A stretch of DNA of 64,000 bases from Thalia democratica (Eukaryota): contig OZ241830.1 of assembly GCA_965202585.1 (NCBI GenBank), positions 52,018,001 through 52,082,000 on the forward strand, written 5' to 3'. Shown here piece after piece: positions 24,171-62,610 of the stretch. A model generated the notes under the pieces. That model searched no databases. It had not been told where the DNA came from and saw only the letters and a program-made list of their open reading frames with translations. Numbering within the stretch: position 1 is the stretch's first letter; every line of letters begins with the position of its first letter. Both the position numbers and the translations under genes were made by a program.

Positions 24171-24190
24171 TTTATATTAAGTAATTTTAA

Positions 24191-39320: not shown

Positions 39321-41044
39321 ACCGACGAACTCGCAAAAGTTACCCTTTTCTCTAAACAAAAGCACAGCAGCGACGTCACAAAACGACGAAACTAAAATAA
39401 ATGTTAAGTACGATCGCGAAATCTTTACAATAAAACACATTTCTTACTTGAAACGAAAACGATTGCAAATAACAAAAAACTTTTTAATATTAGCATATAG
39501 CAAATTTTTAAGACAAACCGCGAATTAGTTTGGTATATATTTCACAAATGGCTATTTAAAACCTAAAAAACTCTAAACGATATTGCACGTATTTTTTAAA
39601 CTAATCATGAATTATTTTGGTACATTTTTCATCGATGGCGCCTTAAAGATTTTGAAATCTAAAAACTTGTTAGTCAGATAATAAACCGTTGTGAAACTTT
39701 GAGAATAACTTCAAACGCGATTTTTCACCGCTGGAAAATCAAATTAAGATGTTATTGAAACTTTACGGTTAATTAACTCTTAAAACGAAAAGTTAAGACC
39801 ACCAAAAGAGTAGTTTGTTTTTATTTAATTGTAGCAGACAACTAGTCTAAGAAGGTTTCTGAACAAAGCTTAGTACGAAATCGAGTCGCAAGAATTTTAA
39901 AGAGTATTTATAGAGTTTAAACTTTAACTTATTTTTATTTTGAGCTTTTACTAATACTAAAAAAGAATTGCCCAAATTTGTTAAACTTAATTTCAATTTG
40001 TTGTTTAGCAACAGTTTTATGTTAAAACTTTGAACTATAATATTCACAGTTGTACTACAATAACATTAGTAATTGCTATTAAAATGGGATGAAGGTAGTC
40101 TTCCTCTTTTGATTTTAAAGACCGGACAGGATTGAATTTTAGATAAATATAAATGGTAAGAACCATTAAAAAAATCAGTCACAGTCTTATACAACCACTT
40201 TGAAGAGATCTTTCGTTTATTAAAAAACAAACATTTTCAATTCTGTAGAAAACAAAAAAATATACTAGCAACTAGAGAAAGTATATTAAATATTTTTAGC
40301 AAAATTTGAAATAAAACTAAAAACTACCATATTATTATAATACTGAATTTCATACTTTTACTTTAAAATTAATGGAACACTTATATTTGAGATTAGTCAG
40401 TAAAGTTTGATATAATTTTTCAATTTGAGAAACTGAGAAAAAGACACTTTGGAAAATTATTTTTGTTTACTGTAACTAAGAAAAACTATTTCTATAAACA
40501 ACAAACAATTAAAAAAATCCCCTAGTATTTTACTTGATAAAAAATTTTTTTTGATGACATTTTCAATTTTTTATTATTAAAACTATTCCTTAAAAACACT
40601 GTTTAAATTAATTTTTGCCTTAGTTTTTTTAATCCACCATTGTTCTGTGTAGTCTAAATTAGTTCTTATAGGGCTTTCTAAAAACTGGACTGTGTAGGCA
40701 TTTTCTATCTTTTCTGGTATATTGTTTTTGTGAAATTTATTATTATGTATAATTAGAGCGAATTGGTCTTTTATTTAATGTTTTAGTTCAGTTTTATTGT
40801 TTTTCCATATGTTTCTGTGGGCATTCCACCTCTTAGTAAAGCTATTCATAGTCTGTCCAATGTATAAATTTTTGCATATGTTGCATGTAGCTGCATAAAT
40901 TCCATAATTTTTGCAATTTAATTGTTGTTTAATTTTCATATTTGTATTGTTTTGTTATTACTTATCATATGTTTATTATAGTTTCCAAAATTTCCACACA
41001 AAGCACACTTTCCATATTCAGCTGTTTTGTTGTTTTCTGTTTTT

Positions 41045-42132
41045 CAGGGTTGCCACACACTCAGGGAATCTCAGGGAATTTTCAAACTGTAGAAAATCTC
41101 AGGGAAACTCAGGGAATTTTGGCATTTTTCTTTTAACTCAGGGAAACTCAGGGAAGTTTTGATTTTTTCTCTAAATTTCAGGGAAGTTTTTGAAAATCTC
41201 AGGGAAATTTTTTTCTAGATCTAGAATGAGGTTTAGTTAATCCAGTTTCAATATTTTGTTCAAAAGTAGTAATTTTTATTATTTAAGTGGTTATTTTGAA
41301 TTTTTTTAGCCTTGCGGCTAGTTCTTCAATATTCTTAGTATTAACATTGTAGTTTTTTTAAGTTTTAAATTTATATTTACTTAAGTAAAATCAAACAGTT
41401 TAGAGAAATGAAAATTGCTGTTAACTATTCATTGAAAAGTTCTAATAAACTTTTTATTTTTAGTTACTTATGTAGTTTAAAAAACACTATGTTGTACTAT
41501 TAGTTCTTATTTTTTAAATAATAAAGTTATTTGTTATTTGTTTACAACTACTTGTTTTCAGTAAAAAAAATTAAAATGAATACAGATTAGTGTTGTATTA
41601 CTTTTGTTAAAAAAATAGAGGTTAAATTTTTGTTTATAAATAATAATTTCAAAAGTAGTAGCAGTTTTCAGAACAGTTGCTAGGAAAGACATACAAGTCA
41701 TAATGAAGTTATTATGTATGCATTTAAGTGAGTTCTTCATGTGAAATTATTATTATAGTATAATTAAATTTTGTCACTTAAAATGTCAAACAAATTAAAC
41801 TTTATTCTTTTATGTAGAAAGTTAACTAACAAGTTTACACAAAGTTGTGCAAAAATTCAGTTTTTAATTTTTAATTGGTTTAAACCTTTTAAGATTGAGT
41901 TTTTGAAAACAGTTTTTTTCATAAATTTAATGCAGAAGCATACACATACAACCTTCCTTTTATTATTAAAGAAGAAAAATGAGAATGAGGTATTAATAAT
42001 TTGTGTTAGAAGAGAAATTTTTTTTTTTAAGATTTGAAAAATACTCAGGGAAACTCAGAGAATTTTAAGGTTACTCAGGGAAATTTTTGGTCACTCAGGG
42101 AAGATTTTTTGGCTCAAAGAGTGGCAACCCTG
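41045..42132. mobile_element. hAT-type non-autonomous element in the left PLE arm
   Basis: TIR CAGGGTTGCCAC, subterminal CTCAGGGAA repeats, and a 6-bp TSD GTTTTT. Confidence 0.9.
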
Positions 42133-43346
42133 GTTTTTGTAAAATTATTTTTGTTTATTAATATATTTCTCAGTGTTTTTGGTCTCTTATAAGTTAATCT
42201 TAATAATTCTGTACTGTAACATTGTTCATTTTTGTTAAAATTTATAAATTATTTAAAGCTGGTTGCCCAAGTCACTTTTTCACTTTGTTCTGATTTTTTT
42301 ATGTTATTTGTACTAGGATCTTTATTACATACTTCATCTAATTCATTAAAGGTATTATTTATTAATTTTTTACTGAAACTTGATCTACTGCATTTAATTT
42401 TTAAGTTAATTAGTGACTTTTCATAATCTTCTGTTTTTTCATTTAATTTTTTAAGTCTATTAGCTTCTGATAAAATTATTTCTCTAAAAACGTGTGTTAG
42501 ATGGTAAGAATTGCCATTTAAAAATTTTGCTAATTTTGCTGTGGGTTTGGTGTGGTTTACTGTTTTGAATCCGTTTATTTCAGAGCTATTTATAGTATGT
42601 AAAATATCTAAAAATTCCAGTTGTTTTCCTTCTTCTGTATTTGAGATTTTTTTTAATTGTAAATTTAGATCATGAGATTGAAATTTTTTGGTGAGTTCAT
42701 CTTGAATAAAAATAGGTTTATCTGCTGGGCACAAAAAATAATGTCGTCTATATATCTTTTATAAATAAAACACAATTTTAAAAAGTTTAATTTTTTAGTT
42801 ATAAAGTGGAGGGCAATATTTGCCAGTGAGACGCTGAAATTTTCTCCTGTAGGTATCCCTTGGTTATTTTTGTATAGACTATTTTTAAAACTAACATAAT
42901 TGTTTTCTAAGCAGAACATTATTGTTTCTACTATTTGTTTATTTTGTTTACAGTTATAATGAGTACAAACTTTCAGGCAATCTTCAAGGGAGTTTTTTAT
43001 CAGAATTCTTTTGAGGGATGGGTATAGGTTTTTAACATCTGCTGTGATTATATTAATTTCTTCTTTAATTTAATTTTTTTTCCAACTAAATAATTCTTCT
43101 AGGTATTGGTCACTATCTTTGCAATATTCATTAATTTCAGTTTTACAATAGTTTATTGCAATATTTTTAATTAGGTTTTGGAGCATGGTGGTAATTCGAG
43201 ACAAAAAACTGTTGCCTATAGCCCAAATCATTCTTGTAGGTATTTCTCTTATATTTTTTGTTTTCACTTGTTCTGGATTTAATTTATGTGTTTTGAATGT
43301 TGGATATATATGTCCTGGGTTGTCATTTTTGAAATATTTTGCTTGC

Positions 43347-44558
43347 AGAACTTAAAGTAGAAAATTTAAACAAAATTAATGTAATAGATGAAAACATATT
43401 ATTCCACACAATAGGAAAAAAAGTTAACAAAAGTGGAATACTGTCGAAAATTACAGGCCCAAAAGCAAAATATTTCAAAAATGACAATCCAGGACATATA
43501 TATCCAACATTCAAAACACATAAATTAAATCCAGAACAAGTGAAAACAAAAAATATAAGAGAAATACCTACAAGAATGATTTGGGCTATAGGCAACAGTT
43601 TTTTGTCTAGAATTACCACCATGCTCCAAAACCTTATTAAAAATATTGCAATAAACTATTGTAAAACTGAAATTAATGAATATTGCAAAGATAGTGACCA
43701 ATACCTAGAAGAATTATTTAGTTGGAAAAAAAATGAAATTAAAGAAGAAATTAATATAATCACAGCAGATGTTAAAAACCTATACCCATCCCTCAAAAGA
43801 ATTCTGATAAAAAACTCCCTTGAAGATTGCCTGAAAGTTTGTACTCATTATAACTGTGAACAAAATAAACAAATAGTAGAAACAATAATGTTCTGCTTAG
43901 AAAACAATTATGTTAGTTTTAAAAATAGTCTATACAAAAATAACCAAGGGATACCTACAGGAGAAAATTTCAGCGTCTCACTGGCAAATATTGCCCTCCA
44001 CTTTATAACTAAAAAATTAAACTTTTCAAAATTGTGTTTTATTTATAAAAGATATATAGACGACATTATTTTTTGTGCCCAGCAGATAAATCTATTTTTA
44101 TTCAAGATGAACTCACCAAAAAATTTCAATCTCATGATCTAAATTTACAATTAAAAAAAATCTCAAATACAGAAGAAGGAAAACAACTGGAATTTTTAGA
44201 TATTTTACATACTATAAATAGCTCTGAAATAAACGGATTCAAAACAGTAAACCACACCAAACCCACAGCAAAATTAGCAAAATTTTTAAATGGCAATTCT
44301 TACCATCCAACACACGTTTTTAGAGAAATAATTTTATCAGAAGCTAATAGACTTAAAAAATTAAATGAAAAAACAGAAGATTATGAAAAGGCACTAATTA
44401 ACTTAAAAATTAAATGCAGTAGATCAAGTTTCAGTAAAAAATTAATAAATAATACCTTTAATGAATTAGATGAAGTATGTAATAAAGATCCTAGTACAAA
44501 TAACATAAAAAAATCAGAACAAAGTGAAAAAGTGACTTGGGCAACCAGCTTTAAATAA
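43347..44558 (+). pseudogene. PLE reverse transcriptase, frameshifted (mirror copy at 42249-43344 on the minus strand)
   Basis: YPTFKTHK, ADVKNLYPS, NQGIPTGENFSVSLANI, RYIDD and EFLDI. The same frameshift after YIDD is present in both arms. Confidence 0.92.
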
Positions 44559-44674
44559 TTTATAAACTTTAGCAAAAATGAACAATGTTACAGTACAGAA
44601 TTATTAAGATTAACTTATAAGAGACCAAAAACACTGAGAAATATATTAATAAACAAAAATAATTTTACAAAAAC

Positions 44675-46406
44675 CAGGGTTGCCACTCTTTGAGCCAAAA
44701 AATCTTCCCTGAGTGACCAAAAATTTCCCTGAGTAACCTTAAAATTCTCTGAGTTTCCCTGAGTATTTTTCAAATCTTAAAAAAAAAAATTTCTCTTCTA
44801 ACACAAATTATTAATACCTCATTCTCATTTTTATTCTTTAATAATAAAAGGAAGGTTGTATGTGTATGCTTCTGCATTAAATTTATGAAAAAAACTGTTT
44901 TCAAAAACTCAATCTTAAAAGGTTTAAACCAATTAAAAATTAAAAACTGAATTTTTGCACAACTTTGTGTAAACTTGTTAGTTAACTTTCTACATAAAAG
45001 AATAAAGTTTAATTTTTTTGACATTTTAATTGACAAAATTTAATTATACTATAATAATAATTTCACATGAAGAACTCACTTAAATGCATACATAATAACT
45101 TCATTATGACTTGTATGTCTTTCCTAGCAACTGTTCTGAATGCAGTAATAAAAACATAAAAGCTTAACATTATTGTAAAAAAACCTGCAAAAAGAAAGTT
45201 TAAAGAAATAGCTAAAGAAATATCTCATATCAAAGTACAACTAAATACCTAACAACTGATACAAAATAATCTAAAATTATTTTTTTTTTTATGTCTTTTA
45301 GATGTTCATACACAATTTATTTTAAATAACTGAAAACATAATTTTGATTTTAAAACAATTTCACATTACCTAATAAAAAAATCTTAATACTGTTTTTTTA
45401 AGTATGCAATTTCTAAATCAATAACTTTAATTTTATTTTCAAGTTTATTTGCGTTGTCCTTAGCAGCTATTCCTCTTGCTAATAATTCTTTCATTGCTTC
45501 TAAATCAGACTGTTTGTTGGCATCTGCAGTATATTTGTCATAGTCTTCATTTAAACATTTGAGTTGCTTTGTAAGTTTACTTTTTTGTTCTCCTAACTTG
45601 CTCAAAGCATCACCTTTATTTGGAACATTTTTAGCAAAGCGCTGTTGCTCAAGATATGCCAAATATTGGGCCCTAGAACATTTTACAAATTTTAACAATT
45701 CAGAACTTAGTTCAACTGTGCTTGGTTCTAGACTGTTTGCATATAGATGATCTTTGATCATTCTTCGGGACCTTATTGTCATCTCTCCCATATTAGTTGA
45801 TATTACTTCCTTATTTAAGCTAAAGCCCCGTTCAACACTTGCCTGGCCATTGTGAAGCACAAAAACAGCCTCAAGGACTCTTGTTAAATCTTTATACTTG
45901 CTTGGGATATCGAGTGTGTCAAAATAAAAGGTGTCTAAACTGTGACTTTTTTTAAGAAAATTTTCAAAAAGTATTTGAGTGTTAGAAGAACTTAACAAAT
46001 CAATGTATTGAAATAGTTAACAAAAACTTTCATTTCTCTAAACTGTTTGATTTTACTTAAGTAAATATAAATTTAAAACTTAAAAACACTACAATGTTAA
46101 TACTAAGAATATTGAAGAACTAGCCGCAAGGCTAAAAAAAATCAAAATAACCACTTAAATAATAAAAATTACTACTTTTGAACAAAGTATTGAAACTGGT
46201 TTAACTAAACCTCATTCTAGATCTAGAAAAAAATTTCCCTGAGATTTTCAAAAACTTCCCTGAAATTTAGAGAAAAAATCAAAACTTCCCTGAGTTTCCC
46301 TGAGTTAAAAGAAAAATGCCAAAACTCCCTGAGATTCCCTGAGTTTCCCTGAGATTTTCTACAGTTTGAAAATTCCCTGAGATTCCCTGAGTGTGTGGCA
46401 ACCCTG
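44675..46406. mobile_element. hAT-type element in the right PLE arm, carrying a transposase fragment
   Basis: TIR CAGGGTTGCCAC and 6-bp TSD AAAAAC. It sits at the same insertion site as 41045-42132. Confidence 0.9.
45384..45998 (-). pseudogene. hAT-like transposase C-terminal (dimerisation) fragment
   Basis: VFVLHNGQASVERGFSLNKE...IRSRRMIKDHL. Confidence 0.75.
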
Positions 46407-46511
46407 AAAAACAGAAAACAACAAAACAGCTGAATGTGGAAAGTGTGCTTTGTGTGGAAATTTTGGAAACTATAATAAACATATGATAAGTAATAACAAA
46501 ACAATACAAAT

Positions 46512-46868
46512 ATGAAAATTAAACAACAATTAAATTGCAAAAATTATGGAATTTATGCAGCTACATGCAACATATGCAAAAATTTATACATTGGACAGAC
46601 TATGAATAGCTTTACTAAGAGGTGGAATGCCCACAGAAACATATGGAAAAACAATAAAACTGAACTAAACCATGAAATAAAAGACCAATTCGCTCTAATT
46701 ATACATAATAATAAATTTCACAAAAACAATATACCAAAAAAGATAGAAAATGCCTACACAGTCCAGTTTTTAGAAAGCCCTATAAGAACTAATTTAGACT
46801 ACACAGAACAATGGTGGATTAAAAAAACTAAGGCAAAAATTAATTTAAACAGTGTTTTTAAGGAATAG
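46512..46868 (+). pseudogene. PLE GIY-YIG endonuclease (mirror copy at about 40590-40945)
   Basis: NCKNYGIYAATCNICKNLYIGQT..F..RW..HR, preceded by a CGKCALC linker. Confidence 0.92.
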
Positions 46869-48754
46869 TTTTAATAATAATAAATTGAAAATGTCATCAA
46901 AAAAATTTTTTTATCAAGTAAAATACTAGGGGATTTTTTTAATTGTTTGTTGTTTATAGAAATAGTTTTTCTTAGTTACAGTAAACAAAAATAATTTTCC
47001 AAAGTGTCTTTTTCTCAGTTTCTCAAATTGAAAAATTATATCAAACTTTACTGACTAATCTCAAATATAAGTGTTCCATTAATTTTAAAGTAAAAGTATG
47101 AAATTCAGTATTATAATAATATGGTAGTTTTTAGTTTTATTTCAAATTTTGCTAAAAATATTTAATTTACTTTCTCTAGTTGCTAGTATATTTTTTTGTT
47201 TTCTACAGAATTGAAAATGTTTGTTTTTTAATAAACGAAAGATCTCTTCAAAGTGGTTGTATAAGACTGTGACTGATTTTTTTAATGGTTCTTACCATTT
47301 TTTTTTATACTTAGTAATTGCTGGTAACAAACTTTATTATCATCTTTTTTTGTTGTTATACACCTCAGCGTACTTATAAAAACACGTTTTTTATAAGGTC
47401 ATTCGAGCTATTTAAATCTTATCTAGTATTTAAACGTTAACAAACAACTTTGTTTTTAACTTTCCTAGAATATTGAAGTTTTAAAATAAATAAGTACAAA
47501 GTTCACCAGCTATATATTTTACGAAAACAAGTTTAAACTTTTGAAATGCATGTGATTGCTTGTTTTGTCAACTAACTCGTGTTAAATGTGAAATGTTTCT
47601 AATACGCTAAAAGTTTGTGGAAAATACTTCGTTTAAACTGAAGCTATAAATGTTTTTAAGTTTGTTATAAACATACTTGGAAGTACTTGAAAATACTTCA
47701 AAAAGTGTCTTCTTTATATTTTTACTTGTAATTAAATTAATTCAAGTAGTTGCTTACACTCTTTTTGCACTTTCGTACGAAAACGGCTCGAGAATTACAA
47801 GACATCAACGAGTCAGCGGAGGAGACGCAGAGATCTGATGTACCATCAGCGTACGGTGGCCGAGGTGGAGAACAGATGAGGAAACCAAGCATGTACGGGA
47901 GCGTGTACGGGAAACAACGGGGAGCGAGTACTATCAGTGAAGAATTTCTAAAAAATATTTCAGTTTTTTTTTGTCATTCTGTAAATTGTTCAAACTTTTT
48001 AATTCTGCACGTCATCAACGGATTTTGTAGCATTTTAAAAGTAAAGTAATACTTTTTTACAAATAATCAGATAAAAGTCGACGACAATCGGCGGTCATTT
48101 TTCATTTATGCTTTTATATTAGAGGTTGCTTAGTGTTTTTTACAAATTCAAAACTAATTAAAGACAATATTTTTCTTAACCCAAGTGCAAATTCTAAAAT
48201 GGCAAATTAAGTGGAGAGAATGTAACACTTCAACAGTTTTCTTCTCAGTCGAAAGCAGTTTTCTTTCTTTTCTCTCAAACTATTTAAAACACTTAAATTC
48301 AGTAACGTGCTTGTTTTGGTGAGTTAGTTTTTAGCTTCTTAGTTGATAACACGTCTATTTCTTGTAAGTGTTGTGTTCCCGTCGTACACTTGTACGACGG
48401 CGACTGTTTTTTATATAAACTTTTGAATTAAAATAGTTTATTTGTACATTTTGCTATATTTTGTTTAGTCGTTTCTATTTATCGTAATACAGCTTTTTGT
48501 TTCTAAGCCTCGATTTCTTTATATAAGTATTTAAGCATTCTAACAATCGTACTACTTAATTAGGCTAAGCTTAAATGTTAGCATAAGTTAAAATTCGCGT
48601 TTTATAAATCGACTTAGCTAAATAACCTACCTAAGTCATTTCTAAACATTTAAGTAACCGTCACCGATTTTGTTATAACGCTTTAAGTCAGTTAGTATCA
48701 GGTTCGCGTAAATATAAGAAACAATTTTACATCGGTAGATCGATTAAGTCTTCT

Positions 48755-49246
48755 TGTAACACTTTAACAGTGTTTTTCGCAGTCGAAAGTGGCTTTCTTT
48801 CTTTTTCTCTCAAATTTATTTACCTTAAATCAGTAAACACGTTTGTTTTTTGAGTTAGTTTTCAGTGTCTTAGTTGATAACGCTTCTATTTCTTGCAAAG
48901 TGTTGTGTTCCCGTCGTACACTTGTACGATGTCGACTGTTTTTTATATGAACTTTTGAATTAAAGTAGGTTTTTTGTAGAGTTTGCTATATTTTGTTTAG
49001 TCGTATTTCTATTCATTAAAATACACCTTTTTGTTCAGAGACTCAATTTCTATATATAAGTATTTAAGCATTCTAACAATCTTACTACTTAATTAGGCTA
49101 AGCTTAAATGATAGTCTAAGTTACTTAGCTAAACCAATTCTAAACATTTAAGTAACTGTCACCGATATTGTTATAACGCGTTAAGTCAGTTAATCGCTAG
49201 GTCGCATAAAGATAAGTAAGAATTAAAACATCGTGTGACAGGCGCA
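48755..49246 (+). mobile_element. Solo LTR related to element B
   Basis: Diverged homologue of the B LTRs with TG...CA termini. TSD TTCT at 48751-48754 and 49247-49250. Confidence 0.88.
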
Positions 49247-52200
49247 TTCTCTATTCCTAAATGCAAATTCTGATGTGCTGCATTGAAAGCTGGTGGTCTC
49301 AATTGTTATGGTAGTTTTATTCAGATGTTGCCAACTTCTATAACTTCAGCAACATTATCTGGTTGGCAAAACTTAACCTTTTTATTTATCCAATCTTTCA
49401 ATTAGGTCTTGTTCACTTTGTTGTAAAAGGGCAACGGAGCTTCGACGAAGCAAAATTTCGATTTGCACTGATATTATTATTCCTTTTCTATCCTCTCTAA
49501 CTCACCCTCTGAATCTTAGTCCTTGGATTCATAGTCCAATATCTCTTCGTAGTCCGGGTCTGTCTAGTAATGACCCATATACATTGTTGCTAGTTGAAGT
49601 GGTTTACTTAGGGCGTCTGCTACGATGTTCTCTAGTCTCTACGCCTTTAAATTAAATGATTTCAGGGTTATATTTTTTATTCTATAAAGGTAACGCTGCA
49701 CTAGAGGGGTTTGGTTCGTCAGAATGTTATTACAACATTACAAAGGACCAAGTTCTCGGATTCTATTATTGTTTGTCGGCAATAGATCCGGCTGTAAAAA
49801 TATACGATACTCATAAACAACCCCTTATGTTAGGTACAACGTACCCGCTTAGCTTCTTTTCGAATACGAATACGGTTTACTTCTCGTATAGAAGGCAAGG
49901 AGTACCATTTTCTCTTGCTCGCCTTCCTTCTCTAACACTGAGTTTCTGACGTATCGGATAACAATACCACGAGCTTCTTTGAATAATGATTCGACAGAGT
50001 TGCTGCATTAGTTAATGCTACTTTTTTATTCTCAAACGCTTTGATATGGTTGTCATCTAGTTTCAATATCGTCTGGCTCAATTTCTTTAAGCCCCCAGAT
50101 ATCTCGCTCAGAGGTGACATAATCTTAGTTAACTTTGGCACAAAGCGATGGTAATAGTTTACCATCCCGAGGAAACGTCTTAGGTTTTTTGTGTGTTAGC
50201 CATAGGGTTAATCTCAGATAGCTCTTTTGAAGATTGGTCGTCAATTCTGTCCACTCTGATGATAAGGTAAAAAAGTTCTAGCCTAAATTTTGCAAAATGT
50301 CTTTTTGGCATTCAGAAAAAGCCTATTTTTGTTAACATCTTTAATACCTTTTCCACATGGTAAATGTGCTGTTGTTCAAATGAAGAATATATGAGTATGT
50401 CATCAGATAGATATAATTAAGCTTTTGAATTCTCTTAACAGACATTCAATCCTTAATTAGAACTTCGTCGGCGCGTTTTTAAAACCAGAAACGCACCGAT
50501 TCGGAAAAAAGACACCACTATGTACATTTTACATTACCAGCGGCTCATCTTTAAGAGTTAGTTGATAGAGGCAGGCTATAGTACGCCTCTTTCAGGTGTA
50601 GGTCTGTAAAAGATCTTGTGACTCTAAAAATAGTTAAGGAGAGTTCATCGATTCTCGGCTGTAGGATAACAAAGTGGGCACGACGTTGCATTCGACCTGG
50701 TAAAATTGACGCAGACCCGCATAGTACCGTCTTTCTTATGCACACAAGTAATCACACAATAAACAGGGGACGCCTTTTGACTTTCCTATCCTCGCACCAC
50801 AATGCCTCGCTGTAGCAAATCGTTGAAATATTCTTTTATAGCTTCTCTGCAACCTCTCGCTCTTCTCGGTTTGATTTTTACGGCTATGTAGTCGTCGAAC
50901 AAAAGATCTAACTCATGGTTGTGCTTGGGCTTAGTATGGTAAGTTGGCTTTTTAGTGATTTCGGGAAAGTTCAATAATAGTATTTAGCATCTCATTCAAG
51001 AGAGAGGTTATTGTCGTTTGCCAGTTTAATTTTGTTAATCAAGGCGTCTGTTGATGTGGTTAAATCAGCTGCTGAAAACATCTTTGCTGATCTCCTAAAC
51101 CCCATTTTGCACTGTTGGGCGGAGGACGGTAAGATGACTAGTTGGTGTGTTACCAGCATGTCCAAGCCAACAATCCCACAACTTCTTGACTCTTGAGTCA
51201 CCCAAAACAAACGTTTCTAGATTGAAAATCACACTCCCGGATAAATTTTCTCATTACCAAAACATTTTGCTTTGCTTCGAAAATACTTATTCATCTCGTT
51301 TGTCAATTTATTTTGTCAGGACGGAGACCTCTGATCTAGAATTGACAAAAAAAAAACGATTACGTTTGAATTTGAAACGAATAAAAGGTTCTGAGGTAAG
51401 TTTTTTTGGTTTAGTACAGGATATTTCGTCAATTTAAAGGCCCATTTCTGTACTCTCTGTGTATCACTGTTGTCAACCGTATTTATCTTTGCTTCTTCTT
51501 TGTTCTTTATAATGCAATCCTCTCTCGTGCATGACTCTGAAGTATCCTCCCCAGCGAGACCTTCGCCTAATAAAATCACTGTTGTCTCCCTCAGTGCAAC
51601 CTTTGGATACGGCTTTCTTTGGCGGCTCTCCCTCCAAAACACTGTCGTCCCTATTAACTGGACTAATAATTTCTCATTCCTTGGCAAAACGTGTGCACTA
51701 AGAATACCTATGTATCTTTTCAATACAGTCCTCAATTTGGTCCTCACCAACGACTCTCTTGCCTTACAAGTGTGATCATAACTTTTTTTGCTCCCTGATT
51801 CCGCTTTAGACGCGTTCACTGGCGTTGAATTTTTCAATAGACAATATCCTATCTGCTTTGCTGTGGGTATGGTAGGTATAGATGGTTCATTGATTCGATT
51901 TATCATGACGCCATTACTAGCTTTTGCGTCGAGATTTAGCTGTCGGGGGATTGTTTTACTTATAGGTTGGACAGCTTCGGTGTGGGATGAAATGCCTTTA
52001 ACCACTCTCCTACTCTTTGCGTGGAGTTTGGATGTTCATTTTTTGGTTGGTACTATATAAAACCATTGTCTGTACTGCATTTCCCACGATCTGAAAAGTA
52101 ATCAGCTCTACTACCAAATTCTCTATGTTCAAGGCAAATGAGTTGCTGTGGAACTTTCTTATTATTGTTGGTAGCCGGCCGAGGTGGTTGTGTTTAAATT

Positions 52201-53794
52201 TTTCTGGTGAGGTTCCAGTTTGTAGCTATTCTCTGGCTTGTGTAATTTAAGTTAAAGGCCTTCGTTTTTTTTTTCCTGGCGAGCAGCGTTGCATATCCCT
52301 CTAACAGCTATGTCAAATTCCCTGCTGTCCGAAAGGAGCTTTTTTCTAATTCTCCCCCTTAAATTAGGAGGTCCTAAGTGGATTGTGACAAACTTTTTTA
52401 CGATGGCCATATCTATAAGCTCTGCCATATACTACTTCAACGTCTAACTCGCGGCTAGGAATCGAATTTTTCTCAGCTCTGTGTAACAATACGTGGCTCA
52501 AGCGTCCCTCTCCACCTATCATGAATTCTTTAAGGGTTTGATAACTCTGGTTAGCTTGATCAAACTTACCTCTTTAATTTTGCTTATTAACTCATGTCAC
52601 CAGTTTCTCAAGCAACTTGTAATGATCCCGGTCCGTCTGAACGTTACGCTAAAAGCATAACTCTTCGAATGATTCTAACTTGAGTGTAATGAGTTTCTCC
52701 TCGCGTTATAAATCCCCCAATCGATGTACTTAAGAAAGGGCTAGATAAAACTTATTTCTTTAACTTCGCTTATCATCCTATGCTACGAGTTTCTCAAGCA
52801 ACTTGTAATGATCCTGGTCTATCTGAACGTTACGCTAACTACATAACTCTTCGAATGATTCTTACTTGAGTGTAGTGTAATTGCGGTTTAGTATGCTGGA
52901 TAAATGACTTAAGATCGTGCGGGGTGTCTCACCGCACCCCTCTATTGTAGTGTAGAATGTGCGTTCCTCAGGCTGAAAATGGCGGTTGTAGTCTGGGCGG
53001 CCTAATTATGATCAAGAGTTTTCTTTTACACTCGAATTGTCCTGACCTAATGGGCGCCTCATTTCGTTTGAATGGACGTGGCTCACCGTTTAGTACAATG
53101 GTGAACTTTATGTTCTTAAAAGTCAGATGAGCTTGACTTTTTGTTTGATGTAGAAGTGTGTTCTGTTGGGGACTTTTATTCTGCTCATCCTTTCTCTTGC
53201 TTTCTGGAGTTCCCGGTCCAACCGAGCTAAACTCTGCAGAGATTCAGTTTTTCTGCCTATCTTCTCATTTAATAATTTCAAGCGTCTTCTAACTTCCAAG
53301 TTTTTGTTTCCAAGCCGCTCTTGTTGTTGCCTCGTTCTCTCAATTTCTAATGTCTTATCTCTAGCTAAATTTTGGCTTTCACGTTGCTACTGTTAGTGCC
53401 TCGTTCTCTCTGGTTTCAGTACCTGTTCTTTAACTAAACACTCATCTCTATTATGGTCGCTTATTTCTATCAGCACGCTAGTTGTCTGCTCCTGACTCAA
53501 CCGTGAGTGTTGCTTACAAGTATCACTATATATCTTTTTTACCACAGTATCTACACTATGACCTATCTCGGCGTTAGTCACCATCTCTTCATTTATATTT
53601 GACTCCATTAAGTTACTCTGATCCACACCGACCTTGCGGCTGGGTGCAGGGTCTGGTTCAACATGTCCGCTCGGAGGGCATGCTGGCGCTAGTTGAAGTG
53701 GTACTGCCTGAGAGTCACCTTCAACTCTAGCAGCTTCAGACCGTCGATTAGCACCCTTTTCAACAAATATTTTACAAAAACGTCTTTCATTCAT
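49247..53794 (-). mobile_element. Gypsy A: decayed gag-pro-RT-RNaseH-integrase N-terminus; LTRs not found
   Basis: Broken motifs LICLEHREFGSRA (gag knuckle), FVNSRSEVSV (protease), DLHLKEAYY, GFKNAP..F, IDDILIF, RRFLGMVNYYHRF (RT), LSDTS (RNase H) and AHQNLHLGI (integrase). Confidence 0.85.
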
Positions 53795-53865
53795 TTTATA
53801 AAAAATTTTAAAACTATATTTTTAAATACTTATTTTTCTAATTAAGTTAGAATATATCTTAATTT

Positions 53866-54097
53866 GTGTACTTCATATTTTAAAGAGAATGATCAATTAT
53901 AAATTTTATTAACAATACAATGTTTCACTCGCTTGAAACTGGTCAAACGAGATCTTCAGTTGTTTAAAATCTTATTCAAATAGAAATATTTTAAATAAGA
54001 TTATTTGAATAAGGTTTTAAAAAACTGAAGATCTCGTTTGACTTATTTCAAGCGAGTGAAAAATTGTATTGTTAATAAAATTTAAAATTTATAATTA
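53866..54097. mobile_element. 232-bp palindromic PLE-end insertion carrying hammerhead motifs
   Basis: Arms at 53895-53982 and about 54002-54096, with a 29-nt tail on the left arm only. TSD ATATCTTAATTT at 53854-53865 and 54098-54109. Confidence 0.82.
53911..53964 (-). ncRNA. Minimal type I hammerhead ribozyme
   Basis: AACAA-CTGAAGA-T-CTCGTTTGA-ccagtt-TCAAGCGAG-T-GAAAC-att-GTA-TTGTT. It has a canonical core, 5-bp stem I, 9-bp stem II, minimal stem III and GUA cleavage triplet. The plus-strand mirror at 54019-54073 is damaged (GAAAA). Confidence 0.8.
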
Positions 54098-54111
54098 ATA
54101 TCTTAATTTTA

Positions 54112-55021
54112 TATCACAGATGTTCTTGTGCTAAAACTTTATTCCGACTAACGGCGTTTCACTGCTCTCAAATAAATTTAAGAACAGATCTACGGAGTCT
54201 ATAAAATGTTAACACACATTAGAAAAAAAGCAGAAAAAAGCATGTATAATTATGTATAGTGTTTATCTAGGTAGTAACTATAAATGGACTTTATGGTTTA
54301 AAAACAAAGTTTGGGATAAAAGCGTAAAATTATAAAATTGTCTACAAAAAAAACAAATTTAATAAAAGTAGGCACCAACCTTAAAAAGCTCTAAGAATAG
54401 GCAAATTTTAAAAATGAAAATTAAATTGAGTTGTGCAGAAATGTTACGTCATAATAATTTTAACAAATTATTCAATAATTTATACAGCTTGAAAACATGA
54501 AGTATTAAACTTGCAAGAATATATAAGTTTTGTAAAATAAATTAGTACATAAATAGACAGAGTTATACTTCATGTTTTCAAGCTGTATAAATTATTGAAT
54601 AATTTGTTAAAATTATTATGACGTAACATTTCTGCACAACTCAATTTAATTTTCATTTTTAAAATTTACCTATTCTTAGAGCTTTTTAAGGTTGGTGCCT
54701 ACTTTTATTAAATTTGTTTTTTTTGTAGACAATTTTATAATTTTACGCTTTTATACCAAACTTTGTTTTTAAACCATAAAGTCCATTTATAGTTACTACC
54801 TAGATAAACACTATACATAATTATACATGCTTTTTTCTGCTTTTTTTCTAATGTGTGTTAACATTTTATAGACTCCGTAGATCTGTTCTTAAATTTATTT
54901 GAGAGCAGTGAAACGCCGTTAGTCGGAATAAAGTTTTAGCACAAGAACATCTGTGATATACATTCCGATAAGCTTAGCTTATCAGGATCTCCAGGATTTA
55001 ACGCCTTATAACGTTACATCT
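54112..55021. mobile_element. 910-bp head-to-head palindromic insertion of PLE 3' UTR
   Basis: Arms at 54112-54505 and 54565-54958, with a tail of about 63 nt on the right arm only. TSD TATCTTAATTTTA at 54099-54111 and 55022-55034. Same family as 56341-62206. Confidence 0.9.
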
Positions 55022-55279
55022 TATCTTAATTTTACAAATATATATGAATGTATCTTAATTCCTGATTACCTTAAATTCACAAGTAATTGTAAATATACCT
55101 TATTATGAGAATATCTGATAATATAAATCAACTTAGTTTAACGATCACTCCGTATTTTTTATTTTTAATGATACTTTAAAAGTATTAGAACTAATTTTTG
55201 CATTTACTTGCTTGTTAATTTTATATTTATTAAGTAATTGACCATCATTTAAATAAAAATTTTTAATTTTAAATTATTT

Positions 55280-55390
55280 CGTGGTAAAATGTCACTAAGT
55301 GCTAAAGTGACACTGTGATAAAATGACACTCCATGCTAAGTGTCACTCCGTACCAAAGTGATGCCGTGCTAAAGTGACGACCCGTGCTAA
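55280..55390. repeat. Degenerate 16-18-bp tandem repeats (GTGCTAAAGTGACAC-like), probably a DNA-transposon subterminal remnant
   Basis: About six imperfect units are visible. No matching opposite end was found. Confidence 0.5.
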
Positions 55391-56340
55391 CAAAAACAGC
55401 TAAATTAACAGCTGTAGTACTTTATTAAAACTTAAACTTTCTTAATTCAAAAAACATTTACATAATCATTATTTTATGGTAAAATTGTCATTATTTTACC
55501 GGCAAAGTTTTAATCTAAACTTTGGTAAACTTATTACAAGCGGTATAACACAAAGCTAAATAAAAAGTTATTTCATTTAAATTAATCCTAAAATAGACAG
55601 ATACAGAAATAACAATACCAACAAAGTTAAAATACAGCTTATACATATAAAAATTAAGCCTAATATTAGTTATCAAGTTTAGTTGTTTTTAGCTAATTTT
55701 TATTAGTTCAATGGTTTTAACTAAGCTACTAACATTAAAATTGAACTAATCTGTCTGTATTAAGGTTTGTATTTTTTATTAAACGTACTAATGTGAAATT
55801 TCTTTTATATTTGACATTGGGATATATGTACTTTTTCAAAACTTTGTACAATTTTCAGGTTATTCTACATCACAGTTGCTCCTTGGCCTTAAAATACTAA
55901 CTAGTTGTGATTTTTTTGAAGCAGAACCATTAACAAAAAGAATTCTATATAATTTGCAGTAAAACTTACCACTTCTATTTTTTAATTTTATTAATAAAAC
56001 AATGTTTTACTTTTTTAACAATATTTTTAAATAAGATTTTTAGTTGATTAATAAAATCTGTAAAATTTAAGGTAAACAAGAAAGAAAAATTTGGGCTAGA
56101 CTCAAAATAAAACTGGCTATTAGGTGTGAAAACAAACAAAGTACGACTAATAATTTGATATAAATTTTAAAACTAGTAGGCGATTTGTTAAAATTGATTC
56201 ATTTTAAGGTTAAAAAAAATAAACTTCTTAAGCTGAATACGACAAAGTTGAACTATTATTAAACAAACATATTTATAATTAGTTGGCTTGTAAACAATCA
56301 AACTCTTGCAAATAGTAAACTAAACTATAATACAGTACAT

Positions 56341-59300
56341 AAGATGTAACGTTAAAAGGCGTTAAATCCTAGAGATCCTGATAAGCTAAGCTTATCGGAA
56401 TATATACCACAGATGTTTTTGTGTTAAAACTTTATTCCGACTAACGGCGTTTCACTGCTCTCAAATAAATTTAAGAATAGATCTACGGTGTCTATAAAGT
56501 ATTAACACACATTAGAAAAAAAGCATGTATAATTATGTATAGTGTTTATGTGGAATAAAAACATAAAATTATAAAATTGTATACAAAAAACACAAATTTA
56601 ATAAAAGCAAACACTAACCTCAAAAAGCTCTAAGAATAGGCAAGTTTTTATAATGAAAATTAAATTGAGTTGTACAGAAATGTTACGTCATAATAAATTT
56701 AACAAATTGATCAATAATTTATGCAGCTTAAAAACGTGAAGTATTTAATTTGCAAGTGTTTGTGATTGTTAATGTGGATGTTGTGAAATAAATAAGTACA
56801 TAAGTAGACAGAGTTATTTAAGGAGAATCGTCGGTTGTGGGGACAAATATTCGATAAACCTTGCCGCTTATTCAGAAGTAGGTCTTTATCTTCTGCTGCA
56901 ATTACTGCTCTTTCTGTATTGCAAGTTGGGCAAATTCTACTTACTCCGTTGGATGCATGTTTGATCTTTGAAACAATACTCCACTCCATATTTGGCCTTT
57001 TACCGTAAATGTGAAATTAGCTCCAGACATAATCCGATAAACGCGTGCTTTGTTTTTTATTTATATTTTAAAAAGTATGTTTATGGTTGGCATATCTATC
57101 ATTGAAACTGCCTGCTGTACTTCCGATATAAGTTTTATCTGGGCCCTTACTTTCAACTTTAACTTTATAAATTACATTTAATTAAACAATTACGTTTTAA
57201 TGGGCAGTTATCTTTATTTATTTTACGGCAATTACATTTTTTAGGCATATTACTTAACTTATAAATATTAGGCTTAGTTGGTTTTGAATATTTATTTATA
57301 GTTTTATTATTATGCATTTTACTTATACTTTTAGCGCTATTATTACTTACTTGTTCTAAGATTTCTTTTATCATTTTAGAAATTCTAGTTATACGTTGAT
57401 TATTATAATCTACACTATTGTTAGTACTATTGATATGAATATTTTCATTTTCATTAATATTTAAATTATTGTTACAGCTTATACCTTTAATATTTAAAGT
57501 TTTAATATGTTTTACATTATTGTTACCATAATTAAAATTACCACTATTAGGATTATCATCATTACTACTGTTATTATCACTACTATTAAAACTATTATTT
57601 TTATTATTACTGTTATTATTAATATGATTAGTTTAATTAGAAATATTATGTATATCTACGTTATTACTAACTTTATTACTAGACTTATTATTTGTATTAG
57701 CTTTGATATGTCTATTTTTAAAGTTTAAAATTACTGTTTTGTTGTGCAATTGTATTAAAGTTTTAACATTACTCATGCAACTAAAAGAAATTTTAACTGT
57801 CTTTCTATAAAGAATTTTATTATAAAAGTTGCTATCGGGGAAGTGTTTATCGACTAGCTTTAAAAACTCTTTACCTAAGTTTATATTAACTGAAGAGCAA
57901 TATGGAGGACTATACCACATTATATGTCGGTTACGCGGTTTTTTTCGTTTTTTATCTACATCTAATTTTTCATACTTTAATTTACATTTAAAACTTCGAT
58001 TTTTTAATTCAGTTTCGTACGGTGCGTTTATTGTGTTAAATATTCTTTCATTCGAAGAGAAGGTACTTAAACGTTTTTGTGTCATTACCGGGAGGCATTT
58101 TTTACATGATAAGGGTGGTCAGAATTAGTATTAATAAAGTTTAATAAAGAATTGGGTTTACGGTACGGACGGTAAGTATTATTAGATAAATCTAAAGTTA
58201 CATCTAAAAAATTCGTTTTTTGCGCTTCTATTTCTAAAGTTATTTTTAAACCGATATCAGACATCAATCTAAACGTTGACTTTTTAATCTTTTCGTAAAC
58301 AAGAGGTTTTGAATGATCAATGACACCGAGTCCATCATCTCTATACAATCCACAATTATCAAAAATACTTTTGAGTTTATCTAGAATGTATAACCCTACA
58401 AGATCGCATACCTCCGCTCCATGAAAACTACCCATTGGTATATCAAAAAACTATCGGTATCATTTTTCTTCCATACATCATCACCCGAAAAAAGTAAAGA
58501 GTCACACGAATGGAATATAATGTCTGTATCTGATTTATTGAAATCAGAAAATTGGGATGCATAATCTAGTGCGTTAATAAGTGCGCTTTTGTAATAGACG
58601 GATAAAATTGGACAATATCAAAGCTAATAAAACGCTTACTACTTTTATTGTTAATGTTGTTAAACTATTGTAATAGTTCACCAGTATTTTTCCATTGGAT
58701 TAGACTAGTGGCTGTTCTTACGTCTTTAATTATACTAGTTAACATTTGTTTAGATATTTTACCAATATGCGTTTTACTTTTACTTGCTTGCTATCTTTAT
58801 AACCTAGGTATACGTTTACCAGTAATATTATTTTCATTTAAAAGTTCTTGTGCACGGGAGTCTATCGTATCAGCCGGATTGTTGGTACATTTTTTATAGT
58901 TTTTTGTGATATTGTCTAAAAGTAACTTTTCATAAATTTTTGTACTGATTTTATATAAATTATTAGTTTTGTCTGCAAAAATAACAAGTTTGTTGACTTA
59001 TTTATAGAATTAATCCTGTTACGTAAATTATATAGAAAGTTATTAGTTTTACCGGGTTTAAGTTCAATTTTATTAATTAAATCAATCAATTCAGATTCAA
59101 ATGGTATTAATTTTACACAGATTGGTGCCGACTTTTTAGTCGGTAAAGGCAAAGATTTACTTATTGTACTTGATTTACTTGTGTTCAAATGAGCATCAGA
59201 ATTATCGGCAACATAGTTTGTTTTTTACACAACTTTTGTTTCGTAATAAAATGCACGCCATCTCATCTTTTGGATGAGGTCGTTAGATTGTTTCATTACG

Positions 59301-62206
59301 CTTTATTACGATGGGGGCGTTTGTGTAATGAAACAATCTAACGCCCTCATCCAAAAGATGAGATGGCGTGCATTTTATTACGAACAAAAGTTGTGTAAAA
59401 AAACAAACTATGTTGCCGATAATTCTGATGCTCATTTGAACACAAGTAAATTAAGTACAATAAGTAAATCTTTGCCTTTCCCGACTAAAAAGTCGGCACC
59501 AATCTGTGTAAAATTAATACCATTTAATCAATAAAATTAAACTTAACCCGGTAAAACTAATAACTTTCAATATAATTTACGTAACAGGATTAATTCTAAA
59601 AAAAAGTTTAATAAACTCGTTATTTTTGCAGACAAAACTAATAATTTATATAAAATCAGTCCAAAAAATTATGAAAAGTTACTTTTAGACAATATCACAA
59701 AAAACTATAAAAAATGTACCAACAATCCGGCTGATACGATAGACTCCCGTGCACAAGAACTTTTAAATGAAAATAATATTACTGGTAAACGTATACCTAA
59801 ATTAGAAAGATCGCAAGCGTATATAACAGTAAAGGATCATAAAGATAATTTTCCTGCAACAGTCAAGTGCAGACTAATAAGTAAAAGTAAAACGCATATT
59901 GGTAAAATATCTAAACAAATGTTAACTAGTATAATTAAAGACGTAAGAACAGCCACTAGTCTAATCCAATGGAAAAATACTGGTGAACTATTACAATAAT
60001 TTAACAATATTAACAATAAAAGTAGTAAGCGTTTTATTAGCTTTGATATTGTCCAATTTTTTCCGTCTATTACAAAAGCGCACTTATTAACGCACTAGAT
60101 TATGCATCCCAATTTTCTGATTTCAATAAATCAGATACAGACATTAAAAATGATACCGATAGTTTTTTGATATACCAATGGGTAGTTTTCATGGAGCGGA
60201 GGTATGCGATCTTGTAGGGTTATACATTCTAGATAAACTCAAAAGTATTTTTGATAATTGTGGATTGTATAGAGATGATGGACTCGGTGTCATTGATCAT
60301 TCAAAACCTCTTGTTTACGAAAAGATTAAAAAGTCAACGTTTAGATTGATGTCTGATATCGGTTTAAAAATAACTTTAGAAATAGAAGCGCAAAAAACGA
60401 ATTTTTTAGATGTAACTTTAGATTTATCTAATAATACTTACCGTCCGTACCGTAAACCCAATTCTTTATTAAACTTTATTAATACTAATTCTGACCACCC
60501 TTATCATGTAAAAAATGCCTCCCGGTAATGACACAAAAACGTTTAAGTACCTTCTCTTCGAATGAAAGGATATTTAACACAATAAAAGCACCGTACGAAA
60601 CTGAATTAAAAAATCGAAGTTTTAAATGTAAATTAAAGTATGAAAAATTAGATGTAGATAAAAAACGAAAAAAAACCGCGTAACCGACATATAATGTGGT
60701 ATAGTCCTCCATATTGCTCTTCAGTTAATATAAACTTAGGTAAAGAGTTTTTAAAGCTAGTCGATAAACACTTCCCCGATAGCAACTTTTATAATAAAAT
60801 TTTTTATAGAAAGACAGTTAAAATTTCTTAGTTGCATGAGTAATGTTAAAACTTTAATACAATTGCACAACAAAACAGTAATTTTAAACTTTAAAAATAG
60901 ACATATCAAAGCTAATACAAATAATAAGTCTAGTAATAAAGTTAGTAATAACGTAGATATACATAATATTTCTAATTAAACTAATCATATTAATAATAAC
61001 AGTAATAATAAAAATAATAGTTTTAATAGTAGTGATAATAACAGTAGTAATGATGATAATCCTAATAGTTGTAATTTTGATTATGGTAACAATAATGTAA
61101 AACATATTAAAACTTTAAATATTAAAGGTATAAGCTGTAACAATAATTTAAATATTAATGAAAATGAAAATATTCATATCAATAGTACTAACAATAGTGT
61201 AGATTATAATAATCAACGTATAACTAGAATTTCTAAAATGATAAAAGAAATCTTAGAACAAGTAAGTGATAATAGCGCTAAAAGTATAAGTAAAATGCAT
61301 AATAATAAAACTATAAATAAATATTCAAAACCAACTAAGCCTAATATTTATAAGTTAAGTAATATGCCTAAAAAATGTAATTGCCGTAAAATAAATAAAG
61401 ATAACTGCCCATTAAAACGTAATTGTTTAATTAAATGTAATTTATAAAGTTAAAGTTGAAAGTAAGGGCCCAGATAAAATTTATATCGGAAGTACAGCAG
61501 GCAGTTTCAATGATAGATATGCCAACCATAAACATACTTTTTAAAATATAAATAAAAAACAAAGCACGCGTTTATCGGATTATGTCTGGAGCTAATTTCA
61601 CATTTACGGTAAAAGGCCAAATATGGAGTGGAGTATTGTTTCAAAGATCAAACATGCATCCAACGGAGTAAGTAGAATTTGCCTAACTTGCAATACAGAA
61701 AGAGCAGTAATTGCAGCAGAAGATAAAGACCTACTTCTGAATAAGCGGCAAGATTTATCGAAGATTTGTCCCCACAACCGACGATTCTACTTTAAATAAT
61801 TTTGTCTACTTTTGTACTTATTTATTTCACAACATCCACATTTACAATCACAAACACTTGCAAATTAAATACTTCACGTTTTTAAGCTGCATAAATTATT
61901 GATCAATTTGTTAAATTTATTATGACGTAACATTTCTGTACAACTCAATTTAATTTTCATTATAAAAACTTGCCTATTCTTAGAGCTTTTTGAGGTTAGT
62001 GTTTGCTTTTATTAAATTTGTGTTTTTTGTATACAATTTTATAATTTTATGTTTTTATTCCACATAAACACTATACATAATTATACATGCTTTTTTTCTA
62101 ATGTGTGTTAATACTTTATAGACACCGTAGATCTATTCTTAAATTTATTTGAGAGTAGTGAAACGCCGACAGTCGGAATAAAGTTTTAACACAAAAACAT
62201 CTGTGG
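56341..62206. mobile_element. 5.9-kb head-to-head palindromic PLE insertion (RT of the MGSFHGAEVC type, decayed)
   Basis: Arms at 56403-59299 and 59325-62210, a 25-bp centre, and a 62-nt tail on the left arm only. TSD (TATA)ATACAGTACAT at 56326-56340 and 62207-62221. RT motifs FDIVQF.PSI, MGSFHGAEVCDLVGLYIL and LYRDDG, plus GIY-YIG remnants (YIGST, CNTER). Confidence 0.92.
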
Positions 62207-62610
62207 TATAATACAGTACATCTTTTTTTAAATCAAATGCTATATTGTGACGTAATTACAAGCTTCCACTAATAAATCTAATGGATTTTTTATTGTCAAA
62301 ATTATTTAGATTCAGAGATAGATATAATTCACTATGTACTCTTTTTTTCACATTACCAACAATTTTTTTTTCTTATTTAAAAAAAACTATTCTTTTTTTC
62401 TTTTAATTTGAAATTTGTCAAGACTTACACGTGACTATTATTAACTAAACAAATACTAATTAAAACGAAAATATAAACAAAATATAATGCAAGAACTGCT
62501 GTTTAGGGTACACCTCAGTTTTAATCTTTAAAAAATTAAACAGCTTAAACAAAAAAAAAAAAGACATTTAAACTACAATATTGTTTAAATTTGCTTTTAG
62601 AAAAACTTAC

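What the first reader, a model, noticed from the sequence alone, without database searches (positions are those of the whole stretch)
40066..62221. Four independent head-to-head PLE palindromes sharing one architecture: TSD, tail on one arm, fixed short-arm end
Insertions of 7.2 kb (40078-47310), 232 bp (53866-54097), 910 bp (54112-55021) and 5.9 kb (56341-62206), from at least two PLE lineages, each have their 3' ends pointing outward, an 11-15 bp TSD, and a 29-73 nt tail on one arm only. In the two same-family events the long arm ends at ACGTTACATCT(T) and the short arm at CATCTGTG(A/G)TA, just before a GATAAGC-tta-GCTTATC hairpin. Established: inverted, tail-less pLTR copies are known for Drosophila Penelope. 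Unlike L1 twin priming, both arms here copy the same RNA segment almost in full. Inferred: both nicked target strands prime reverse transcription, at two defined RNA positions and possibly on two RNAs of a dimeric RNP, which would fit minimal hammerheads acting as dimers. The empty site of the 7.2-kb event is confirmed by uninterrupted homology to 1900-2040.
Basis: partly seen in the sequence, partly recalled or inferred. Interest (0 to 1): 0.78.

Follow-up and report, generated by a model that had tools for sequence, protein, structure and literature searches.

The report
Head-to-head Penelope-like retrotransposon insertions
The four inverted-repeat insertions are real, but they have the standard, already published shape of Penelope-like retrotransposon insertions (two arms facing outward, one duplicated target site, a short extra tail on one arm), so this is a clean example of a known pattern, not a new one.

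Summary
Window 40078-47310, 53866-54097, 54112-55021 and 56341-62210 are head-to-head inverted repeats. Each lies inside an 11-15 bp target-site duplication and has a 22-65 nt tail on one arm only.

Two lineages are endonuclease-positive Penelope-like elements (PLEs). One is a canonical GIY-YIG family. The other is a very young, abundant family of the published "Hydra" clade.

In the Hydra-clade family the pattern holds genome-wide:
- 34 of 38 unbiased head-to-head pairs carry exactly one tail.
- 25 of 26 events have a TSD of at least 9 bp.
- Both arm end points are fixed.

Short-read contigs from two other runs show the empty allele of the 910-bp insertion.

This architecture is a published PLE hallmark (Arkhipova 2013; Craig 2021).

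Added here: arm lengths are coupled, and the tail-less arm reaches further 5' in 22 of 25 events. That argues against simple snap-back. No hammerhead was detected. The 232-bp and 910-bp events reuse one target site. An earlier follow-up on other DNA of this genome also judged such an insertion a textbook PLE.

The parts
40066..40077 (.). Left TSD copy of the 7.2-kb event (TTAGTAATTGCT). The right copy is at 47311-47322.
   Evidence: the paralogous empty site carries one copy
40078..40142 (-). Family A tail: about 65 nt of 3' extension present only on the left arm
40143..43344 (-). Family A tail-bearing arm. It contains an arm-specific 237-nt segment at 41430-41666.
43345..43462 (+). 118-nt centre of the 7.2-kb event, coding-collinear with the tail-less right arm (ORF 43339-44142 runs through it)
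43463..47310 (+). Family A tail-less arm. It holds broken RT ORFs at 43339-44558 (YIDD), an arm-specific 871-nt segment at 45141-46011, and a GIY-YIG ORF at 46512-46868.
   Evidence: (RVT_1 E 7e-4; GIY-YIG 25.8 bits, above the cutoff)
53854..53865 (.). Left TSD copy of the 232-bp event (ATATCTTAATTT). The right copy, 54098-54109, overlaps the left TSD copy of the 910-bp event.
53866..54097 (.). 232-bp palindrome of an older family (arms 88% complementary, about 22-nt tail at 53866-53887). It carries a CUGAAGA...GAAA hammerhead-core-like string. PLE origin is inferred, not shown.
   Evidence: left junction bridged by contigs of two runs
54099..54111 (.). Left TSD copy of the 910-bp event (TATCTTAATTTTA). 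The right copy is at 55022-55034.
   Evidence: the empty allele has a single copy
54112..54564 (-). Family B (Hydra-clade PLE) tail-less arm of the 910-bp event. It includes the 59-nt centre 54506-54564, which is collinear with this arm.
   Evidence: row L014
54565..55021 (+). Family B tail-bearing arm. The tail is 54961-55021, with stem-loop GATAAGC-TTA-GCTTATC, and ends at ACGTTACATCT.
56330..56340 (.). Left TSD copy of the 5.9-kb event (ATACAGTACAT). The right copy is at 62211-62221.
56341..59299 (-). Tail-bearing arm of the 5.9-kb event (tail 56341-56402). It belongs to a subfamily 92-94% identical to the young family B.
59325..62210 (+). Tail-less arm of the 5.9-kb event, ending at CATCTGTGGTATA. 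Its RT (YRDD) and GIY-YIG reading frames are broken.
1647..2032 (-). Paralogous empty site of the 7.2-kb event

Best explanation
These are four retrotransposition products of endonuclease-positive Penelope-like elements, in the class's usual insertion shape.

Shown:
- Family B encodes a telomerase-like RT plus a C-terminal GIY-YIG nuclease, with the motifs of the published Hydra clade. It is very young: many copies are 100% identical, and the 910-bp insertion is absent from other sequenced individuals.
- Each event sits inside one 10-15 bp TSD at an AT-rich, often (TA)n, target.
- Its two arms are antisense-outward copies of the same 3' part of the element.
- One arm ends at an inner site and the other 61-63 nt further 3', so there is one tail per event.

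Inferred mechanism:
1. The nuclease makes staggered nicks on both strands.
2. Each 3' OH primes reverse transcription of element RNA, one at the inner start site and one at the outer start site. The two sites flank a stem-loop.
3. The two cDNAs grow in parallel, and the inner-site cDNA usually leads.
4. Their 3' ends are joined by microhomology or a short filler (template switch). This makes the arms almost equal in length and leaves a short centre that belongs to the leading arm.

Whether one RNA or two are copied is open.
For: PLE identity:
- Family A ORFs hit RVT_1 and GIY-YIG.
- The family B 837-aa protein has more than 800 homologues.
- 3 of 25 of these homologues hit Pfam GIY-YIG.
- The predicted fold is closest to telomerase RT (3du5, 7lma).

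Architecture genome-wide:
- The 20-mer common to both kinds of arm end occurs 669 times, and 312 of these continue into the tail.
- On contig C1, 38 head-to-head pairs have one tail in 34, both in 1 and none in 3, against 18.9, 8.5 and 10.5 expected under independence (p 1e-6).
- TSD of at least 9 bp in 25 of 26 events.

Mechanism:
- The inner ends of the arms are coupled: median difference 116 nt against 542 under random pairing, permutation p < 5e-5.
- The centre is collinear with the tail-less arm in 22 events, with the tail arm in 3, tied in 2 (p 1.6e-4). The 7.2-kb event follows the same rule.
- Centre junctions show 2-24 nt overlaps (16 events) or 2-31 nt fillers (13 events).

Recency: the empty allele of the 910-bp insertion is seen at unique depth in runs X15 and X16.

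Literature: both strands are cleaved and extended, there are two RT start sites, and the tail lies between them (PMC11167929).
Against: - No hammerhead ribozyme was detected, although Hydra-clade PLEs are reported to have canonical ones.
- Pfam RVT_1 and a PDB sequence search do not recognise the family B RT, so its RT assignment rests on fold and motifs.
- In vitro, PAc showed no strand difference in start-site use, whereas here the two sites are used once each.
- Three events have the tail arm leading.
- The palindrome centres of the 7.2-kb and 5.9-kb events could not be checked with long reads.
- The arms of the 7.2-kb event differ by unrelated internal segments. A simple copy of one RNA does not explain this.
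Confidence: 0.85

Rival explanations
1. Snap-back. A single cDNA primed at one nick folds back on itself and copies itself, which gives the second arm.
For: It would explain the coupled arm lengths and the short centres with microhomology. Self-priming was discussed for PLE palindromes in PMC3846280.
Against: The first cDNA must contain the centre loop, and its copy cannot carry sequence that the first cDNA lacks. Yet the tail sits on the arm that lacks the centre in 22 of 25 informative events. Only 3 events fit this model.
Confidence: 0.06
2. Assembly artefact. The palindromes are chimeric long-read or assembly errors.
For: Long inverted repeats are a known artefact class. The centres of the two large palindromes could not be checked, because only short-read contigs were available.
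Against: Each structure lies inside a TSD. Hundreds of events share fixed end points and the one-tail rule. Independent runs bridge the 232-bp left junction and show a precise empty allele of the 910-bp event. A paralogous empty site exists for the 7.2-kb event.
Confidence: 0.01
3. Two separate insertions in opposite orientation at one site, or a later inverted duplication.
For: PLEs do re-use sites: the 232-bp and 910-bp events share one target.
Against: A single TSD flanks each whole palindrome. Arm lengths are coupled, there is exactly one tail per pair, and the arms are 99-100% identical.
Confidence: 0.02
4. For the 232-bp element only: it is a foldback or MITE-like DNA transposon with long terminal inverted repeats, not a PLE product.
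For: It has no coding sequence and is a near-perfect hairpin. Its family has more than 1100 candidate copies, often as adjacent -/+ pairs. The putative tail (53866-53881) is not shared by the 57 scored matches, none of which extends beyond query position 115 of 127.
Against: Its 12-bp TSD matches the PLE range and the very target later used by family B. Its arm shows the same motif order as the family B 3' region, including a CUGAAGA...GAAA core-like string.
Confidence: 0.2

Closest known systems
Canonical insertion structure of endonuclease-positive Penelope-like elements (Arkhipova et al. 2013, PMC3846280; Craig et al. 2021, PMC8557442)
   Same: An inverted 5'-truncated copy lies head-to-head with the main copy. 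The whole unit is flanked by one TSD, with a short tail on only one end. Tandem variants are also present in this genome (for example C1:11530071/11532907/11536110).
   Different: The tails here are 61-65 nt rather than 30-40 bp. Most events are near-symmetric palindromes without an upstream direct pLTR, and many are only 130-300 bp.
PAc (Poseidon of Anolis carolinensis) in vitro reaction, Frangieh et al. 2024 (PMC11167929)
   Same: Both target strands are used as primers. There are two defined RT start sites next to a stem-loop, and the tail is the stretch between them. The target is AT-rich.
   Different: In vitro there was no strand difference in site use. Here each event uses each site once (34 of 38), and the inner-site arm usually reaches further 5'. 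No hammerhead was detected here.
Hydra clade of C-terminal EN+ PLEs (Craig et al. 2021)
   Same: Family B has the RWK-like, DKT, CxC..C linker and CxxC/CxH motifs, no CCHH, inserts into (TA)n, and is about 3 kb long.
   Different: Canonical hammerheads reported for the clade were not found by Rfam. This copy has a long asparagine-rich insert between RT and EN, as described for rotifer PLEs in PMC3846280.
L1 twin priming
   Same: The second nicked strand also primes reverse transcription, which produces an inversion inside one TSD.
   Different: In L1 the two segments cover different, adjacent parts of one RNA. Here both arms cover the same 3' part almost completely.

Membership tests
Endonuclease-positive Penelope-like elements | Reverse transcriptase of the PLE/telomerase lineage | tested here: met
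   Family B: the predicted fold is closest to TERT (3du5, 7lma), with YRDD and DKT motifs. Family A: weak RVT_1 hit and a YIDD motif. Pfam RVT_1 does not hit family B.
Endonuclease-positive Penelope-like elements | GIY-YIG endonuclease fused C-terminally to the RT | tested here: met
   Family A ORF 46512-46868 scores 25.8 bits for PF01541, above the cutoff. Family B has a C-terminal VIYKV...IYIGST...R..H motif, and 3 of 25 homologues hit PF01541.
Endonuclease-positive Penelope-like elements | Insertions with a TSD, tandem or inverted pseudo-LTR arrangement, and a tail on one end | tested here: met
Endonuclease-positive Penelope-like elements | Hammerhead ribozyme motif in the terminal repeat (typical, not universal) | tested here: inconclusive
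   No Rfam hammerhead match at the gathering score or at E up to 10. Only a core-like CUGAAGA...GAAA string in the 232-bp element, and a version with two core changes in family B.
Hydra clade of PLEs (Craig et al. 2021) | RWK motif, DKT in place of DKG, CxCX5C linker, no CCHH in the EN core, CxxC and CxH around the conserved E and N | tested here: met
   The consensus of 25 homologues shows RMRWKAF, FADKT, CNCRKKxxC, IYK...YIGST without internal cysteines, CxLCNxEK and CxH. The window-family copy has CxCX7C. No tree against reference PLEs was built.
Hydra clade of PLEs (Craig et al. 2021) | Preferred insertion into (TA)n | tested here: met
   Nine of 26 TSDs consist largely of TA repeats, and 22 of 26 begin with TA.
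L1-type twin priming | The two inverted segments copy different, adjoining parts of the RNA | tested here: not met
   Both arms map to the same element coordinates up to the centre.

The most novel reading that the evidence does not exclude
In vivo, a PLE integration complex uses its two reverse-transcription start sites in an obligatory one-each, ordered way. The inner-site cDNA leads, the outer-site cDNA lags by about 100 nt, and the two are joined end to end. This would imply an asymmetric two-polymerase complex, either copying two RNAs in step or following each other on one RNA. The published in vitro work did not resolve this and saw no strand difference in site use.
Probability: 0.4. Interest if true: 0.5.

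Novelty: already known. Interest (0 to 1): 0.3.

Why it matters
For annotation, these structures should be called single PLE insertions, not pairs of elements, foldback transposons or assembly errors.

For the PLE field, this genome holds hundreds of near-identical, very recent events of one family. The 669 exact arm ends correspond to roughly 300 palindromes. That makes it a natural data set for the unresolved later steps of PLE integration. The one-tail rule, the coupled arm lengths and the leading tail-less arm are quantitative constraints that any model has to meet.

Tried and rejected
- Hammerheads: Rfam scans at the gathering score and at E up to 10 gave none, only spurious miRNA-like hits on the hairpins.
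- Family B protein: Pfam on the full protein gave nothing, and a PDB sequence-profile search gave nothing. Fold search was needed.
The family A and 232-bp family censuses therefore could not be done on sequence (searches gave coordinates only).
- Reads: only short-read Logan contigs were on offer, so the palindrome centres were not testable.
- Poly(A) site idea, considered and rejected: the inner end might be a poly(A) cleavage site, since AATAAA lies 26 nt upstream at 54927-54932. No A/T tract is found at tail-less ends.
- Independent choice of start site per arm is rejected by the count.
Full report
**Observation.**
- The 7.2-kb event has arms 40143-43344 and 43463-47308 (98-99% complementary) around a 118-nt centre.
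- The 232-bp event has arms 53888-53991 and 53993-54096 (88%).
- The 910-bp event has arms 54110-54505 and 54565-54960 (99%) around a 59-nt centre.
- The 5.9-kb event has arms 56403-59299 and 59325-62210 (98-100% outside, 81-94% near the centre).

Reading the borders gives the stated TSDs and a tail on one arm only: 40078-40142, 53866-53887, 54961-55021 and 56341-56402. In the two related events the long arm ends at ACGTTACATCT(T). The short arm ends at CATCTGTG(A/G)TA, 8 nt before a 7-bp stem-loop that is predicted to fold in both copies. The flanks of the 7.2-kb event, joined with one TSD copy, align without a break to window 1647-2032 on the minus strand (79% over 395 nt, E 1e-68). The paralogous empty site is therefore real.

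**What the elements are.** The right arm of the 7.2-kb event carries broken ORFs with a YIDD reverse-transcriptase motif (weak RVT_1 hit). [quoted passage not shown] This is a degenerate canonical EN+ PLE.

The 910-bp and 5.9-kb events belong to a second lineage. Other genomic copies of it have open frames of about 840-860 codons. Pfam does not recognise this protein, but several lines identify it:
- It has more than 800 homologues, and 3 of 25 sampled homologues hit GIY-YIG.
- Its predicted structure (mean pLDDT 75, core above 90) is closest to telomerase reverse transcriptases.
- The family consensus shows RMRWKAF, FADKT, CNCRKKxxC, a GIY-YIG core without cysteines, and CxxC/CxH around the conserved E and N.
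- These are the features Craig et al. 2021 list for their Hydra clade, including the preference for (TA)n targets seen here.

The 232-bp element has no coding sequence and belongs to an older family with more than 1100 candidate copies at 86-96% identity, often in adjacent -/+ pairs. Its PLE origin is only inferred.

**Is the pattern a rule?** The 262-nt 3' end with tail has more than 2000 candidate matches in the 802-Mb genome, and all 40 scored matches are 100% identical.
- I examined 34 such loci. One had no inverted partner within 9.4 kb. Of the other 33, 28 have a partner ending within about 2 nt of the same inner site, two have tails on both arms, and three are irregular.
- TSDs of at least 9 bp (median 13) occur in 25 of 26 regular events, against 5.7% of mismatched flank pairs.
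- That sample was ascertained through the tail, so I also counted exact patterns. The 20-mer common to both kinds of end occurs 669 times, and 312 of those continue into the tail.
- On contig C1, 100 ends form 38 head-to-head pairs. Exactly one tail is present in 34, both in 1 and none in 3. Independence predicts 18.9, 8.5 and 10.5 (p about 1e-6).
- Many events are tiny, with 133-300 bp between the two 20-mers.

**Reads.** Only short-read Logan contigs were available.
- In runs X15 and X16, contigs at unique depth join 54072-54098 directly to 55022-55214. This is the empty allele of the 910-bp insertion with a single TSD copy and with the 232-bp element already present. The 910-bp insertion is therefore recent and polymorphic, and it landed at the border of the older element.
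- Contigs bridge the left junction of the 232-bp element in two runs.
- Contigs reach 25 nt into the tail of the 5.9-kb event in three runs, fewer than the 31 nt needed to count as bridging.
- The centres of the large palindromes could not be tested.

**Mechanism.** Each event was mapped to one natural long copy.
- The two arms stop at nearly the same element position: median difference 116 nt for arms of 283-3028 nt, against 542 nt under random pairing (permutation p < 5e-5).
- The short centre is collinear with the tail-less arm in 22 events, with the tail arm in 3, and tied in 2 (p 1.6e-4). The 7.2-kb event follows the same rule, because ORF 43339-44142 runs through the centre into the tail-less arm.
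- Centre junctions show overlaps of 2-24 nt (16 events) or fillers of 2-31 nt (13 events).
- A single cDNA that snaps back cannot give its copy a tail that it lacks itself, so simple snap-back fits only the three exceptions.
- The data fit two RNA-templated cDNAs, one per nicked strand. They start at two sites 61-63 nt apart, the inner-site cDNA is usually ahead, and they are joined at their 3' ends.
- Whether they copy one RNA or two is open. The arms of the 7.2-kb event carry unrelated internal segments (237 versus 871 nt). Each segment is joined to one neighbour in dozens of other copies. This is compatible with two templates but also with later rearrangement.

**Comparison with what is known.** The architecture is described in the PLE literature: an inverted 5'-truncated copy, one TSD and a tail on one end only (PMC3846280; PMC8557442). 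Frangieh et al. 2024 showed in vitro that a PLE protein cleaves and extends both strands, that reverse transcription starts at two internal sites near a stem-loop, and that the tail is the sequence between them. They also predicted that the protein dimerises.

The proposed link to dimeric hammerheads finds no support here. No Rfam hammerhead match appears in any of the four insertions. There is only a core-like string in the 232-bp element. An earlier follow-up in this scan, on other DNA of the same genome, also judged such a structure a textbook PLE insertion.

**Verdict.** What may be new is quantitative: the one-tail rule at about 90%, the coupled arm lengths, and the lead of the tail-less arm.

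Noticed in passing
window 53854-55034: The 232-bp and 910-bp insertions used the same target. The TSD sequence occurs three times, offset by 1 nt between the two events. The empty allele of the younger event still has the older element, so the new PLE landed exactly at the end of an old one. This points to homing to PLE ends or a very narrow target preference.
   Followed up: partly
window 41430-41666 and 45141-46011: The two arms of the 7.2-kb palindrome carry unrelated internal segments (237 versus 871 nt). The 871-nt segment holds an antisense 204-codon ORF (45384-45998) with no Pfam hit that looks like a hAT-transposase C-terminal region. Each segment is joined to only one of its neighbours in dozens of other genomic copies.
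   Followed up: partly
L039 and L043 (G000:C5:82548212-82554205 and C4:23903092-23905987): Two family B palindromes have tails on both arms, and both have the same right-flank sequence. They are probably one event inside a duplicated or repeated segment.
   Followed up: no
L037:3403-5913 and window 60836-61240: The family B protein has a long asparagine-rich, low-confidence insert between RT and endonuclease (residues about 552-692, pLDDT under 50). This resembles the N-rich inserts reported for rotifer PLEs.
   Followed up: no
window 54927-54932: A canonical AATAAA lies 26 nt upstream of the inner (tail-less) end point of family B. No A/T tract is present at tail-less ends, so a poly(A)-site origin of that end seems unlikely, but this was not tested on RNA.
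   Followed up: partly
window 23686-24190: Another small unit with 90-nt inverted ends (89%) encloses a GIY-YIG-like coding fragment (IIYKFSCHCGSDYVGK). It is probably a remnant of a third, canonical PLE lineage.
   Followed up: no
(runs holding window 53600-55300): Fourteen marine, seawater and plastisphere metagenome runs hold about 0.2-0.35 of the words of this stretch. ENA metagenome contigs of about 3 kb encode proteins 98% identical to the family B protein. The host, or a close relative carrying the same element, is therefore common in marine samples.
   Followed up: no
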